The notes under the pieces are model-generated. The model was not told the DNA's origin, did no database searches, and saw nothing but the letters and a program-made list of their open reading frames with translations. From the NCBI GenBank assembly GCA_002104945.1, contig MCFH01000061.1:248001-312000 (forward strand): a stretch of DNA of 64,000 nt. The letters run 5' to 3'. The stretch's first letter is position 1; each line of letters begins with the position of its first letter. Made by a program: the position numbers and the translations under genes. The stretch is from Piromyces finnis finn. Lineage: Eukaryota; Fungi; Neocallimastigomycota. This document shows positions 8,017-41,653 of this stretch, in pieces.

Positions 8017-10454
8017 TTATATATCTGGGCAAAATCCATATTTATTTTGGCATTTGTTAATGGAACAGTAAGCCGAGGTTGTTCCACAGTAGCCTTTGTT
8101 ACTACAGCATTTGTTATCGGAACAGGTTCCATAACTTTCTCCACATTTGCAACTACCATAGTTAGATTGACATCCACTAGATGATGCACAATAAGCTTTG
8201 GTTCTTCCACAATATCCTTTCTTACTACAGCATTGTCCGTCTGAACATAATCCATAGTTTTCACCACATTTACAACTACCATAGTTAGATTGACATCCGT
8301 TGGAAGAATAACAGTAAGATTTAGTTTTTCCACAATATCCCTTTTTACTACAACATAAACCATCTGAACACATTCCATAATCCTCACCACATTTACAAGT
8401 ACCGAATTCAGATTGACATCCATTAGAAGCAGCACAATGAGCATCGGATACTCCACAATAACCATGTTTACTGCAACATTTACCAGAAGGACAACTACCA
8501 AAGACACCTCCACATCTTCTTGCAGCTTCACATTTATTACCATAGTTATATTCTGAATGACTATATAATATGTTTTTATATAAGCAAAAAAACATTATGA
8601 TGTGTTATAAAATAAATATAAATATATTAATATTTTACTTTTTATTAAAATAATCTACACAATAAATAGATAAATAAATAAATCAATAATTACTTTATTT
8701 TTTGAATTTCAGCTGGAAGAGTATCAATACAATTTTTATCAATTCCTCTATAAATTTAAAAATATTATATTTAATAATTAGTATATTTCATTCAAATGAA
8801 ATAATAATGGCAGTCAGTTAAATTTTAATATTTACAAATATATAAGATTTTCTAAATTTCCAATTTCAGCTGGGACTTCCTTTATTCTGTTATCTGAAAA
8901 ATCTCTAAACACATTATTTAATTATATAAAATAAATAAAGAGATATATTTATTAAATTAAAAATTTAATAAAAAATCATATACATATGATAACAAAGAAT
9001 CTATATATATACATACAAAAATATGAGATTTTTAAGATTAGCAATTTCTGATGGAATTGTGGATAATACATTACTTTGTAAATATCTATTAACATAGTTT
9101 TAATAATTAAAGAATTAATTTTTTTGATCTTATATGTATATAGTACAATATATTTTTTTACTTACAATTGTTCAAGATTGGTAATATTTCCAATGGAATT
9201 TGGAATTTCAGTTATTTCATTATTATATAAAAGTCTATAATAAAAATTTAAATTTATAAATGTGTTAAAAAAAGCTATTTTATATATTGCTATTGGTAAG
9301 TTTATCGTTTTACTAACAAATATAAAAGATTCTTAAGATCACCAATAGTTGAAGCAATTGTAGATATTTTATTATTAAATAAATATCTATATTTTATAAA
9401 TATATATTTATATTTTAAATTTGTGAATAAATTTATATATATTATATTATATCATATAATGCTATTATTATTATAAATTTTATTCTTATTAAATTACAAT
9501 TTATTAAGACTTTGAAGATTTTTAATTTCAGGTGGAATGGAGGTTACTACATTGTTAGATAAATCTCTATAAATTGTATAAAATACATTATTTTATTATT
9601 TTATTTATATAGATGAATTTTCAATATTATTTGTTAATATTTAATATATTATATTTACAAAAAGTTAAGATTTTTAAGTTGGCAGATGTCTGATGAAATG
9701 GTAGTTAATGTATTATTATTTAATTGTCTATAGTAATTATTTTAATTAATGTTAGTATTATTATAAATATGTAAATAAATATATAAAATATTAATTATAT
9801 TATATATTATATATATAATATCTTAATTTCGTACAATGTTAAAAGATGTTCAAGATTTCCAATTTCTGGAGAAATTTTAGTTAACATATTCCTTGATACA
9901 TCTCTATAAATATATAATTTTATTATCATTAATAACTATTAATTTTAATAATCTATATTTAATATTTATATTATTAATTATTTGTTAATTTACAATGTTT
10001 CAAGGTTCTTAAGTTTTTCAATATCTGAAGGAATTTCAGTTAATTTATTATCATATAAATTTCTATTAATATTAAATATTAATAGAGATAAATAGAAAAT
10101 TAAAAAATTATTATACTTATCATAAATATGATTTAAATAAATATATAATTTTATACGAACAAGAAAGTTAAAGAGGTTATTTTATATACAAATTTTGGTA
10201 TTTCTGTTAAATCTTGATAATTTATATACCTTTTTTTAATTAAATAAAATAAAATAATTTATATTAATGGTTTTTTTTATATTTATAATTTTATATTATT
10301 TAATATATGATATATACAATTTTGAAGCATTTTTATATTTATTGTCTTCACAACTAGTAACAAGATTTCCTAATTTTTGTTTAACTTCTTTACATGAATA
10401 ACCAAAAGTTATTGAAATTAATAACCCCAAAATCAAAATAGATTTTAATATCAT
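8017..10454 (-). CDS. Secreted LRR + 4xCBM18 (hevein-type chitin-binding) protein, copy 1; 12 exons, about 451 aa
   Basis: Exon 1 is 10454-10318 (MILKSILILGLLISITFGYSC...). Nine 69-nt LRR exons: 10229-10161, 10062-9994, 9903-9835, 9727-9659, 9566-9498, 9386-9318, 9234-9166, 9085-9017, 8904-8836. A 54-nt partial LRR exon at 8747-8694, then the CBM exon 8560-8017 with four CxxxxGxCxxxxCCSxxGYCG...C repeats. All junctions are AG/GT and join in frame. Confidence 0.9.
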
Positions 10455-11115
10455 TTTATTTTTGTCCTGTATTTTTTGCTTTATTTTAAAAAGTTAATAC
10501 AATTATTATAGATTTTAAAATAAAAAATTGTAAATTTTCTTTGTTTTATTTCTTTAGATAAAAAGTATAATTGAAACTTGGTCTAATTGAAAAATGAAGG
10601 AAAAGTGAAAAGTCATTCTATTTATACTTTTTATTGAAAATAAACTTTTTATTACTTAATTAAAATAAATTAGAATTAAATAACATGATATCTGAAACTA
10701 TTTAAATATAATATTTAATTATAATATTTAATTATAATATTTAATTACCATTATTACTACTACTATTATAATTATTATTATTATTATTATTATTATTATT
10801 TACACTTGTTCATATATTAACAAATATATTAATGAAAATATTTAAATTGAAATAATTAAAAGAATTTCTTTATCAAATAGAATTTCTTCAAAATTAAAGA
10901 AATCTCTTAATTTATCTTTCTGAAATCTTATTGGTTCTAGTCTTCAAAGAATGACGTTTATCTTTTATTGATTTTCTATGAAGAGTTTATTTGTATTATA
11001 TTAAAATATATATATTATTTTTTATTATGTATAATCCAATTATAAATTAATTTAATTTTATATATAGAAAAAAGATAAAGTCTTGATAATTTTTTTTTCT
11101 ATTACTCATCCTTTT

Positions 11116-39194: not shown

Positions 39195-41653
39195 TTATTT
39201 ATCTGGGCAAAATCCATATTTATTTTGGCATTTGTTAATGGAACAGTAAGCTGAGGTTGTTCCACAGTAGCCTTTATTACTACAGCATTTGTTATCAGAG
39301 CAGGTTCCATAACTTTCTCCACATTTGCAACTACCATAGTTAGATTGACATCCACTAGATGATGCACAATAAGCTTTGGTTCTTCCACAATATCCTTTCT
39401 TACTACAGCATTGTCCATCTGAACATAATCCATAGTTTTCACCACATTTACAACTACCATAGTTAGATTGACATCCGTTGGAAGAATAACAGTAAGATTT
39501 AGTTTTTCCACAATATCCCTTTTTACTACAACATAAACCATCTGAACACATTCCATAATCCTCACCACATTTACAAGTACCGAATTCAGATTGACATCCA
39601 TTAGAAGCAGCACAATGAGCATCGGATACACCACAATAACCATATTTACTACAACATTTACCGGATGGACAACTTCCAAAAATGCCGCCACATCTTCCTG
39701 CAGCCTCACATTTATTACCATAATTATATTCTGAATGACTATTTAAAATGTTTTTAAAAGCAAAAGTATATTAGGATTAGTTATTAAATAAATATAAATT
39801 TAAATATATATTATTTTTAAATTAGTCTACGCTATAAATATATAAAAAATAGGCAATTACTTTATTTTTTGAATTTCAACTGGAAGAGAATCAATACAAT
39901 TTTCATTAATTCCTCTATATTTTTTTGATTTAAAAAAATTATATTTTATAAATATAATATTTTATAATTAGTTCAAATGAAATAATAATAACAGTCAATT
40001 AAATTTCAACATTTACAAATATAAAAGATTTTCTAAATTTCCAATTTCAGCTGGGACTTCCTTTATTCTATTATCAGAAAAATCTCTAAGCACATATAAT
40101 TATGAAAAATAAAAATATATATTTATTATATTAAAAATTTACTAAAGAAATATATATATAAAAGAAAAATAAATATATATATATATACATACAAAACTAT
40201 AATATTTTTAAGATTAACAATTTCTGATGGAATTATGGATAAGCCATTACTATTTAAATACCTATCAGCATAGTTTTAATAATTATAGAATTAATAAAAA
40301 TATGTTAAATTTTTAAAGTTTATATGCGTATACTACAATATATTTTATACTTACAAATGTTCAAGATTGGTAATATTTCCAATGAAATTTGGAATTTCAG
40401 TTATTTCATTATTATATAAAAGTCTATAATAAAAATATAAATTTATAAAAGTTAAAAAAAAACTATTTTATATATTGTTAAGTGTATTATTTTACTAACA
40501 AGTATAAAAGATTTTTAAGATCACCAATAGTTGAAGCAATTGTAGATATTTTATTATTAAATAAATATCTATATTTTATTAATAAACATTTATATATTTA
40601 TATTTTAAATTTGTGAATAAATTTATATATATTATATTATAATATGCTATTATTATTAAATTACAATTTATTAAGACTTTGAAGATTTTTAATTTCAGGT
40701 GGAATAGAAGTTACTAAATTGTTAGATAAATCTCTATATAGTGTATAAAATATATATGTTTATTATTAGTATAATACATTATTTCCTTTTTCAATAAAGA
40801 AGAAATTTCAATACTATTTTTAATATTTAACATATATATTTACAAAAAGTTAAGATTTTCAAGTTGACAAATGTCTGATGAAACGGTAGTTAATGTATTA
40901 TTATTTAATTGTCTATAGTTATTATTTATATTTTATTCATGTTAATATTATTATAAATATGTAAATAAATATAGAAAATATAAATTATATTTATATATTA
41001 TATATATATTATTCCCATAATCTTAATTTCGTACAATGTTAAGAGATTTTTAAGATTTTTAATTTCTGGAGAAATTTTAGTTAACATATTCCTTGATACA
41101 TCTCTATAAATATTTAAATATAGTAATTTTTATAAATATTTATTTTAGCAATTTATATTATATAATATTAATAATAAAAGTCTACTTACAAAGTTTCAAG
41201 ATTCTTAAGTTTTTCAATATCTGAAGGAATTTCAGTTAATTTATTATCATATAAATTACTATTTATATTAAATATTAATATAAATATATATAATAAAATT
41301 TAAAAAATTATTATATTTATCATATATATAACTCAAATACATATATATCTTTATACGAACAGGAAAGTTAAAGAGGTTATTTCATATATGAATTTTGGTA
41401 TTTCTGTTAATTCTTGATAATTTATATATCTTTTTTTCAATTAAATAAAATAAAATAACTTTTATTAGTATTTTTTTATATTTACAACATAATATTTTTT
41501 AATATGACATATATACAATTTATAAACTTTTCCATATTTATTTTCATCACAACTAGTAACAAGATTTCCTAAGCGTTGTTCAACTTCTTCACATGAATAA
41601 CCAAAGGTTATTGAGATTAATAACCCCAAAATCAAAATAGATTTTAATATCAT
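39195..41653 (-). CDS. Secreted LRR + 4xCBM18 protein, copy 3; 12 exons, about 451 aa
   Basis: Exon 1 is 41653-41517. Nine 69-nt LRR exons: 41429-41361, 41258-41190, 41103-41035, 40912-40844, 40733-40665, 40568-40500, 40423-40355, 40261-40193, 40085-40017. A 54-nt exon at 39914-39861, then the CBM exon 39738-39195. Exon-for-exon colinear with copy 1. Confidence 0.9.

What the first reader, a model, noticed from the sequence alone, without database searches (positions are those of the whole stretch)
8017..41653. Variable-LRR / constant chitin-anchor gene family with one LRR per symmetric 69-nt exon
Seen: three genes share the layout signal/N-cap exon, an array of exactly 69-nt exons each encoding one 23-aa LRR, a 54-nt cap exon, and one exon with four CBM18 domains. 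Every LRR intron interrupts the same Leu codon in phase 2, so any exon can be skipped, duplicated or swapped without a frameshift. The most variable residues are those starting each exon (xLxxN, e.g. HIHSK, YLPNN, VLYYN, TLNDN, NISQN, RFNEN). Established: these positions form the concave ligand-binding face of LRRs. One-LRR-per-exon shuffling is known in Ectocarpus ROCO genes, and a variable domain fused to a chitin-binding domain defines amphioxus/Ciona VCBP gut immune proteins. Inference: these proteins bind the fungus's own chitin wall and display diversified LRR surfaces, either to recognise rumen microbes or to inhibit foreign enzymes (PGIP-like). I do not know this architecture as a described system in gut fungi.
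Basis: partly seen in the sequence, partly recalled or inferred. Interest (0 to 1): 0.92.

Follow-up and report, generated by a model that had tools for sequence, protein, structure and literature searches.

The report
Gut-fungus LRR proteins with chitin anchors
Three paralogous genes of the anaerobic gut fungus Piromyces finnis encode secreted proteins with 9 or 12 leucine-rich repeats, one per 69-base exon, joined to four chitin-binding modules; they belong to a large, uncharacterised family found across gut fungi, so this is a real and moderately interesting find but not a proven recognition system.

Summary
Three minus-strand genes share one layout:
- A, 10454-8017
- B, 15013-12120
- C, 41653-39195

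Each has a 137-nt signal/N-cap exon, 9 (A, C) or 12 (B) exons of exactly 69 nt (one 23-aa LRR each), a 54-nt truncated-LRR exon, and a 544-nt exon with four Pfam CBM18 modules. All 36 introns are GT..AG and phase 2, inside a Leu codon.

RNA contigs confirm ten B introns base for base, and also a fully spliced, much deeper gene-A transcript.

The window is Piromyces finnis (GCA_002104945.1). Public annotation holds A as a 451-aa protein but splits B into two genes.

LRR+CBM18 proteins occur in Anaeromyces, Piromyces, Neocallimastix and Orpinomyces and in rumen transcript contigs, named only "RNI-like" or "L domain-like". The one-LRR-per-exon layout is shared across genera.

- Between A and B, concave-face residues diverge most (62% vs 29%, p=0.001).
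- dN/dS at those sites is not significantly above 1.
- A and C are under purifying selection (0.30).
- Array introns show no recent exon duplication, and no skipping isoform was seen.
- A and B are mosaics: near-identical promoter/signal and anchor modules flank diverged arrays, which points to gene conversion.

Function (wall-tethered LRR display) is inferred. The scan flagged the same family on other pieces of this genome.

The parts
8017..10454 (-). Gene A, 451 aa: signal/N-cap exon, 9 LRR exons, cap exon, 4xCBM18 exon. Highly represented in RNA contigs. Same extent and length as a public 451-aa gene model.
10318..10454 (-). Gene A exon 1 (137 nt): signal peptide (MILKSILILGLLISITFG) and a two-Cys N-cap; ends in phase 2.
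8836..10229 (-). Gene A array of nine 69-nt LRR exons separated by 80-112-nt phase-2 introns.
8694..8747 (-). Gene A 54-nt cap exon: first 18 residues of a further LRR, with one Cys.
8017..8560 (-). Gene A last exon: four CBM18 (hevein) modules and the stop codon.
12120..15013 (-). Gene B, 520 aa: same layout with 12 LRR exons. Public annotation splits it into a 322-aa LRR gene and a 192-aa CBM18 gene.
12939..14792 (-). Gene B array of twelve 69-nt LRR exons. Ten of its introns are confirmed base for base by RNA contigs.
12797..12850 (-). Gene B 54-nt cap exon, joined to LRR exon 12 in a B-specific RNA contig.
12120..12663 (-). Gene B last exon: four CBM18 modules.
39195..41653 (-). Gene C, 451 aa: collinear duplicate of A (3.4 kb at about 86% identity). 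Its own expression is not established.
40017..41429 (-). Gene C array of nine 69-nt LRR exons.
39195..39738 (-). Gene C last exon: four CBM18 modules.
7967..8747 (-). 3' homogenised tract of A: cap exon, 133-nt intron, CBM18 exon and about 50 nt of 3' flank. It is 98-100% identical to B 12070-12850, while the next intron upstream is about 63% identical.
10368..10704 (-). 5' homogenised tract of A: about 250 nt upstream plus the first 87 coding nt. It is 94-100% identical to B 14927-15263.

Best explanation
These are three members of a large family of secreted LRR-CBM18 proteins in the Neocallimastigomycota.

Shown:
- Each gene is transcribed and spliced into one mRNA. The mRNA encodes a signal peptide, a Cys-capped arc of about 10 or 13 LRRs of 23 residues, and four C-terminal hevein-type modules. 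There is no membrane or GPI anchor.
- Each LRR is one symmetric phase-2 exon.
- The paralogues differ by whole repeats and mostly at concave-face residues.
- The promoter/signal module and the anchor module are kept nearly identical between A and B.

Inferred:
- The four CBM18 modules bind chitin multivalently and hold the protein non-covalently on the fungus's own chitin wall.
- The LRR arc projects from the wall as a binding surface for a protein or other ligand, serving adhesion, docking of partners or wall-associated sensing.
- Different arrays carry different specificities.
- The shared end modules are kept alike by gene conversion, perhaps with selection resisting homogenisation of the arrays.
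For: - Gene models and phase.
- Splice joints in RNA contigs, and junctions of the CBM18, cap and LRR exons in one transcript.
- CBM18 identity. Nearest solved relatives are pokeweed lectins, WGA and hevein.
- LRR identity: the motif itself; Pfam LRR_8/LRR_4/LRR_14 on relatives that align over residues 1-450.
- Family in four gut-fungal genera and in intron-free rumen transcript contigs. At least 74 distinct LRR+CBM18 proteins were retrieved, with CBM18 C-terminal in 71 of them.
- The same exon-per-LRR design in A. robustus and P. finnis relatives.
- Unit orthology showing whole-repeat gain and loss (A4-5 absent in B; B7-11 extra).
- Concave-face divergence.
- Mosaic identity of A and B.
- Context from the literature: CBM18 genes, including a 4xCBM18 gene, are the most induced CAZy-class genes when Caecomyces churrovis is co-cultured with a methanogen (PMC8665504). 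Chytrid CBM18 lectin-like proteins are an expanded family (PMC3569864).
Against: - No binding, localisation or ligand data exist.
- In all four modules the first aromatic of the hevein binding triad is Lys or His; Ser and two aromatics are kept. Affinity per module may therefore be low (direct reading).
- CBM18 could instead bind GlcNAc polymers of other organisms.
- Gene A's very high depth in what appear to be culture transcriptomes fits a constitutive wall protein better than an induced receptor.
- A/C are under purifying selection.
- No sign of recent exon shuffling and no skipping isoform.
Confidence: 0.55

Rival explanations
1. Released bridging lectin or adhesin. The CBM18 modules bind GlcNAc-containing polymers of other rumen organisms (bacterial peptidoglycan, methanogen pseudomurein, other fungi). 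The LRR arc binds the fungus or a second partner, promoting physical association.
For: CBM18 transcripts are the most strongly induced class in fungus-methanogen co-culture, and the authors suggest a role in physical association (PMC8665504). Hevein-type lectins such as WGA, the nearest solved relatives, bind GlcNAc glycans other than chitin (own knowledge).
Against: It is not known whether the induced C. churrovis genes carry LRRs. Gene A is abundant in RNA runs labelled with a single organism. The producer's own wall is the nearest and most abundant chitin.
Confidence: 0.17
2. Chitin shield or enzyme inhibitor. The protein coats wall chitin against chitinases of rumen bacteria and protozoa, as CBM18/Avr4-type effectors do, and the LRR arc directly inhibits foreign hydrolases in a PGIP-like way.
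For: A secreted CBM18 protein of Verticillium protects hyphae from chitinases (bioRxiv 10.1101/462499, listed). Chytrid CBM18 lectin-like proteins are discussed in that role (PMC3569864). LRR proteins can inhibit enzymes (PGIP; own knowledge).
Against: The repeats are not the plant-specific 24-aa GxIP type. The nearest solved LRRs are Leptospira LIC proteins, SHOC2 and plant receptor kinases, not PGIP. Shielding needs no LRR arc.
Confidence: 0.1
3. Diversifying, immune-like recognition repertoire. Exon-modular LRR cassettes between constant modules are actively shuffled or alternatively spliced to generate many specificities against rumen microbes.
For: - Symmetric exons allow it.
- Repeat number differs between paralogues.
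- Concave sites diverge fastest between A and B, with dN/dS 1.39.
- Constant ends flank a variable array.
- Many family members exist in the genome (unchecked notes).
Against: - dN/dS is not significantly above 1.
- A/C have 0.30 with no concave enrichment.
- Array introns are at background similarity, so duplications are old.
- Only full-inclusion transcripts were seen.
- There is no signalling domain.
Confidence: 0.12
4. Endogenous wall-integrity or morphogenesis factor, analogous to plant LRX proteins. The wall-bound LRR binds a self peptide or a wall-remodelling enzyme.
For: High apparently constitutive expression of A. Strong purifying selection on the anchor (dN/dS 0.04-0.08) and 0.30 on the A/C arrays. 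Neighbouring family loci sit beside chitin deacetylase genes.
Against: No extensin-like domain and no known partner. Concave divergence between paralogues is not expected for a single conserved ligand.
Confidence: 0.06

Closest known systems
Brown-algal ROCO LRR genes (Ectocarpus, Saccharina) with exon-shuffled LRRs (PMC11378527)
   Same: One LRR per symmetric phase-2 exon. Arrays of equal-length exons. Variable residues on the concave face.
   Different: Exons are 72 nt there and 69 nt here. The algal proteins are cytoplasmic LRR-ROC-COR GTPases with documented recent shuffling, positive selection and splice variants. The fungal proteins are secreted and have a CBM18 tail, and no recent shuffling or isoforms were detected.
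Tetrahymena 90-bp-exon LRR genes (PMC6564038)
   Same: Tandem arrays of exactly equal LRR exons with an extreme phase-2 bias and a junction codon shared by neighbouring exons.
   Different: Different repeat length (30 aa) and thousands of young genes with clonal expansions. No carbohydrate-binding anchor.
Wall-anchored bacterial LRR adhesins (Listeria internalins; Leptospira LIC LRR proteins, the best PDB hit 4u09)
   Same: The same logic: secreted N-capped LRR arc plus a module that holds it on the producer's cell wall. The 23-aa repeat type resembles Leptospira LIC12759.
   Different: The anchor is LPXTG or GW modules on peptidoglycan or teichoic acid, not CBM18 on chitin. No Ig-like inter-repeat domain here. 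Eukaryotic, intron-rich genes.
Plant LRX (LRR-extensin) proteins and PGIPs
   Same: Extracellular LRR proteins held in the cell wall.
   Different: Plant-specific 24-aa GxIP repeats. The anchor is an extensin domain or ionic binding. No CBM18.
Chytrid CBM18 expansions (Batrachochytrium lectin-like, deacetylase-like and tyrosinase-like classes; PMC3569864)
   Same: Multi-copy CBM18 modules in secreted proteins of zoosporic fungi. Partner domains vary.
   Different: No LRR class was described there. In gut fungi the LRR partner is common: 28 of the 150 nearest CBM18 clusters.
VCBPs of amphioxus and Ciona
   Same: A variable recognition domain fused to a chitin-binding domain in a gut setting.
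   Different: V-type Ig domains and a different chitin-binding fold. Animal host proteins that bind chitin-rich gut mucus and microbes, not the producer's wall.
LRR + CBM1 proteins of green algae (Atlas cluster)
   Same: An LRR arc fused to a wall-polysaccharide-binding module in a eukaryote.
   Different: The module is cellulose-binding CBM1. This is an Atlas feature match only and was not examined further.

Membership tests
Leucine-rich repeat proteins (Pfam LRR clan) | Tandem 20-30-residue units with the LxxLxLxxN core | tested here: met
   30 units of 23 aa with Leu/Ile/Val and Asn at fixed positions. Full-length alignment to relatives that carry Pfam LRR_8, LRR_4 and LRR_14 above cut-off.
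CBM18 / hevein domain (Pfam PF00187) | About 40-residue, 8-Cys module scoring above the Pfam gathering score | tested here: met
   92.8-93.8 bits against a cut-off of 27.8, in four stretches per protein. PDB hits to pokeweed lectins, WGA and hevein.
CBM18 / hevein domain (Pfam PF00187) | Ser plus three aromatic residues forming the GlcNAc-binding site | tested here: inconclusive
   The CCS-x-x-G-Y-CG...Y/H-C pattern keeps Ser and two aromatics. The first aromatic is Lys or His in all four modules (alignment and direct reading).
CBM18 / hevein domain (Pfam PF00187) | Binds chitin | not testable with these tools
   Needs recombinant protein.
PGIP (plant polygalacturonase inhibitors) | Plant-specific 24-aa LRR with the GxIP motif | tested here: not met
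   Units are 23 aa and read xLxxIPxxIGxL. The best solved relatives of a family member are Leptospira LIC12759, plant receptor kinases (GSO1, FLS2), LRRD1 and SHOC2; no PGIP is among the 60 listed.
VCBP | N-terminal V-type immunoglobulin domains | tested here: not met
   The N-terminal region is an LRR array.
Exon-shuffled LRR receptors of the ROCO type | One LRR per symmetric phase-2 exon | tested here: met
   All 30 LRR exons are 69 nt and phase 2-2. RNA joints agree. The design also occurs in relatives from two genera.
Exon-shuffled LRR receptors of the ROCO type | ROC-COR GTPase domains | tested here: not met
   The protein ends in CBM18 modules and there is no room for other domains.
Exon-shuffled LRR receptors of the ROCO type | Recent exon duplication or shuffling, and splice variants | tested here: not met
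   Intron pairs in the B array average 61% identity against 58% for shuffled controls. Only full-inclusion contigs were seen, but contigs drop rare variants.
Internalin-type wall-anchored LRR adhesins | 22-aa LRRs, an Ig-like inter-repeat domain, and an LPXTG or GW anchor | tested here: not met
   23-aa repeats followed directly by CBM18 modules. The resemblance is functional logic only.

The most novel reading that the evidence does not exclude
Anaerobic gut fungi carry a germline repertoire of wall-displayed LRR binders. Interchangeable one-repeat exons form variable cassettes between promoter/signal and chitin-anchor modules that gene conversion keeps constant. Different cassettes recognise different rumen partners or enemies (methanogens, bacteria, protozoa). 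This would be an extracellular LRR recognition layer in a kingdom reported to lack LRR pattern receptors (PMC2939053).
Probability: 0.13. Interest if true: 0.85.

Novelty: new variant of a known kind. Interest (0 to 1): 0.55.

Why it matters
Fungi have been reported to lack extracellular LRR pattern-recognition receptors (PMC2939053). How gut fungi attach to or sense methanogens, bacteria and plant particles is unknown.

- A large, expressed family of secreted LRR arcs on chitin anchors gives concrete candidates for that interface. It may also explain part of the unexplained CBM18 induction in fungus-methanogen co-cultures (PMC8665504).
- The exon design adds a fungal case to the recurrent 'one LRR per phase-2 exon' theme.
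- The A/B mosaic is a clear example of concerted evolution of end modules around a diverging binding array.
- Gene B is split into two genes in the public annotation and can be corrected.

Tried and rejected
Close full-length homologues, their cluster and a structure model were therefore not obtained. No structure prediction was run, because a model of a 36%-identical relative would not change the reading.
- The search of 1.84 billion representatives with the CBM18 exon and the word-index search with P0074 gave no full-length relative above about 45% identity.
- The metagenome scan gave no relative above 64% in the CBM18 part, so no cross-strain dN/dS was possible.
- Look-ups of the ABC-transporter ORF and of a 274-aa ORF, meant to view the annotation around gene C, found no exact product.
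- The apparent 'skips 925' and similar joints were considered as exon skipping. They were rejected: they carry gene-A alleles and are the 9-repeat A transcript laid on B.
- The PGIP-like and VCBP-like labels were rejected as memberships.
- The supplement of PMC8665504 does not say whether the induced CBM18 genes carry LRRs.
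Full report
**Where the window comes from.** The window is very AT-rich (GC 11-30%).
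- A 370-aa dockerin-esterase ORF at 18743-19855 is 100% identical, over all aligned residues, to a Piromyces finnis protein.
- The 192-aa ORF at 12120-12698 is an exact annotated product on contig MCFH01000061.1 of GCA_002104945.1.
- The window is therefore from the anaerobic gut fungus P. finnis (Neocallimastigomycota).

**Checking the observation.**
- A mechanical scan for AG-[69 nt]-GT, open in the phase-2 frame, gave 6 unrelated matches on the plus strand and 44 on the minus strand.
- 30 of the 44 are LRR-like and lie in three regular arrays of 9, 12 and 9.
- Joining them to the flanking exons gives three complete reading frames:
  - A: 10454-8017, 451 aa.
  - B: 15013-12120, 520 aa.
  - C: 41653-39195, 451 aa.
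- Each gene has a 137-nt first exon encoding a typical signal peptide and a two-Cys N-cap. Then come 9 or 12 exons of exactly 69 nt, then a 54-nt exon that is the first 18 residues of a further LRR (with one Cys), then a 544-nt last exon.
- All 36 introns are 74-133 nt, GT..AG and phase 2. The split codon is always Leu, the fourth position of the LxxLxLxxN core.
- The last exon holds four Pfam Chitin_bind_1 (CBM18) modules at 93 bits against a cut-off of 27.8. Its nearest solved relatives are pokeweed lectins C/D, wheat-germ agglutinin and hevein.
- There is no C-terminal hydrophobic tail, so neither a membrane anchor nor a GPI anchor is predicted (direct reading).

**Transcript evidence.** Four RNA data sets of the same organism hold the locus.

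Laid on 12000-14641, their contigs reproduce ten B introns to the base. The joints, in window coordinates, are:
- 12850/12939
- 13007/13091
- 13159/13272
- 13340/13418
- 13486/13561
- 13629/13736
- 13804/13921
- 13989/14080
- 14300/14406
- 14474/14562

The last joint is read from contiguous contig pieces.
- A much deeper contig (word depth about 2000, 900 and 230, against 12-44 for B-specific contigs) carries the gene-A alleles at 12177 and 12375.
- Its pieces sit at record positions spaced in multiples of 69 nt.
- It runs through the cap exon into the CBM18 exon, and a loose end at 12662 continues with the gene-A base and then the cap exon.
- So A is expressed as one fully spliced LRR-CBM18 message.
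- The large 'skips' are this 9-repeat paralogue laid on the 12-repeat gene, not exon skipping.
- C's own expression is not established. Its word share of 0.13-0.23 is not clearly above the roughly 0.15 that I estimate for the CBM18 stretch it shares with A and B.

**Annotation.**
- The public annotation has A as a 451-aa product with the same extent as my model.
- It splits B into a 322-aa LRR gene that reads into the intron after LRR 12, and a separate 192-aa CBM18 gene.
- The B-specific joint LRR12/cap exon contradicts that split.

**The family.**
- A profile-free search of 1.84 billion representatives with the CBM18 exon found 776 clusters.
- 28 of the best 150 carry an LRR region like A/B.
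- A search with one of them (P0074) returned 835 proteins at E<=1e-10.
- Most listed hits have Pfam LRR families plus PF00187. The named ones with that architecture all come from Anaeromyces robustus, Piromyces finnis, Neocallimastix species and Orpinomyces. Their names are 'RNI-like protein', 'L domain-like protein' or 'hypothetical'.
- At least 74 distinct LRR+CBM18 proteins were retrieved. They are 303-1566 aa with 1-7 CBM18 motifs (mode 3). The CBM18 modules are C-terminal in 71 of 74.
- Rumen-derived contigs carry uninterrupted LRR-CBM18 reading frames, so they are spliced transcripts. Some carry the 23-aa repeat type seen here (L008), others a plant-like GxIP type (L004-L012).
- In an A. 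robustus and a second P. finnis family member, each LRR is again one exon bounded at the same Leu, with exon lengths of 69-96 nt.
- The design is therefore old and shared across genera.
- None of the retrieved proteins is more than about 45% identical to A/B/C over the full length.
- The nearest solved LRRs of a family member are Leptospira LIC12759, plant receptor kinases, LRRD1 and SHOC2. This is a generic 23-24-aa type and not PGIP.

**How the paralogues differ.** A and C are collinear duplicates.
- Exons are 86-97% identical, introns 72-84%, and dS is about 0.15.
- dN/dS is 0.30 for their LRR region and 0.06 for CBM18.
- Their 18 amino-acid differences in the array are not enriched at concave positions (7/54 against 8/81, p=0.59).

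B differs from A by whole repeats.
- A1-3 correspond to B1-3, A6-8 to B4-6, and A9 to B12 (70-91% nucleotide identity).
- A4-5 have no partner in B, and B7-11 are extra.
- B6, B9 and B10 are 81-83% alike, which points to internal duplication.
- Introns within the array are at background similarity (61% against 58% for shuffled controls). These events are therefore old.

Across the seven orthologous A/B units:
- The six concave-face x positions (unit positions 2, 4, 5, 7, 22, 23) differ at 26 of 42 sites.
- Convex x positions differ at 18 of 63 sites (p=0.001). The result is the same for C/B.
- dN/dS is 1.39 at concave sites, 0.40 at convex sites and 0.26 at core sites.
- With only about 20 synonymous sites, 1.39 is not significantly above 1. 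Fast change at the binding face is shown; positive selection is not.

**Mosaic structure of A and B.** A and B lie 4.1 kb apart.
- They are 94-100% identical from about 250 nt upstream to coding nt 87.
- They are 98-100% identical from the cap exon through the 133-nt intron and the CBM18 exon to about 50 nt past the stop.
- The neighbouring intron is about 63% identical and the LRR arrays have dS 0.35.
- The distal three CBM18 modules and the 3' flank are also nearly identical in C.
- The 'constant anchor' is thus maintained by gene conversion (or cassette replacement) in addition to purifying selection.
- Why the arrays escape homogenisation is open. Selection for different arrays is one possibility.

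**Mechanism.**
- Shown: a secreted protein with an LRR arc and four hevein modules, expressed from one mRNA; a family with modular exons, repeat-number variation and a fast-evolving concave face.
- Inferred: multivalent CBM18 binding holds the protein on the fungus's own chitin wall, and the LRR arc acts as an outward binding surface.
- Caveat: the Ser and two of the three aromatic binding residues are kept in every module, but the first aromatic is Lys or His. Chitin binding is therefore likely but unproven.
- Rivals: a released lectin that bridges to GlcNAc polymers of other microbes; a chitin shield or enzyme inhibitor; a diversifying recognition repertoire; an LRX-like wall-integrity factor.
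- The high depth of A in single-organism transcriptomes favours a constitutive wall protein. The concave divergence between paralogues favours more than one ligand.

**What is known.**
- I found no paper describing an LRR-CBM18 fusion in gut fungi.
- LRR and chitin-binding type-1 domains were each noted among the most abundant domains in these genomes (PMC6004548).
- An LRR-dockerin protein appears in a cellulosome screen (PMC12421816).
- CBM18 genes are the top-induced CAZy class in a fungus-methanogen co-culture, with unknown function (PMC8665504).
- One-LRR-per-phase-2-exon arrays are well described in brown-algal ROCO genes (72 nt, PMC11378527) and Tetrahymena (90 nt, PMC6564038). [quoted passage not shown]
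- Wall-anchored LRR display is known from bacterial internalins and plant LRX proteins (own knowledge).
- Expanded LRR receptor kinases and 'LRR effectors' have been noted in chytrids (PMC13618815).
- Set against the reported absence of LRR pattern receptors in fungi (PMC2939053), this is a new variant of known kinds rather than a new category.

**Earlier scan notes.** Earlier notes of this scan flag LRR-CBM18 genes and one-repeat-per-exon LRR receptor-like genes on other pieces of this genome. I did not check them. They suggest the family is genome-wide.

**Verdict.** Interest is moderate (0.55). The family is real, expressed, phylum-wide and uncharacterised, and the mosaic A/B structure is notable. 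However, there is no evidence for active shuffling, splice diversity or positive selection, and function is inferred from domains alone.

Noticed in passing
window 12120-15013: Public annotation of P. finnis splits gene B into a 322-aa LRR-only gene (ending in the intron after LRR exon 12) and a 192-aa CBM18-only gene starting at an intronic ATG. RNA contigs join LRR exon 12 to the cap exon.
   Followed up: yes
window 18743-19855 (-): Dockerin (CBM10) plus esterase gene in a single 370-aa ORF. The public 328-aa model removes exactly the 42 residues that hold the CBM10 dockerin, as if they were an intron. This is either a mis-annotation or a dockerin-skipping isoform.
   Followed up: partly
window 4217-7119 (+) and 25094-27991 (-): Inverted segmental duplication (95.8% over 2.9 kb) of an 806/808-aa gene with no Pfam family.
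   Followed up: partly
window 353-2368, 22567-24562 and 49385-50468: Three related copies of a CotH-kinase gene region (79-84% identity). The copy at 21992-23500 has a long Thr/Glu/Ser-rich repeat tail. The window as a whole is rich in duplications.
   Followed up: partly
window 11047-11463 and about 15263-16000: Long (ATT/TAA)n-type microsatellite arrays lie upstream of the shared promoter module of genes A and B.
   Followed up: no
window 37213-37692: About 480 nt of a 15-nt tandem repeat (reads as ILFYF in one frame) between the ABC transporter gene and gene C.
   Followed up: no
window 31891-36768 (+): Intron-less 1625-aa ABCA-type transporter ORF. No gene with exactly this product is on record, so the public model differs.
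   Followed up: partly
L001 1-1568 (A. robustus contig MCFG01000138.1): An LRR-CBM18 gene of A. robustus lies next to a polysaccharide (chitin) deacetylase gene.
   Followed up: no
L004-L012 (rumen transcript contigs): A second class of LRR-CBM18 transcripts uses plant-like 24-aa GxIP repeats, so at least two LRR types are fused to CBM18 in gut fungi.
   Followed up: partly
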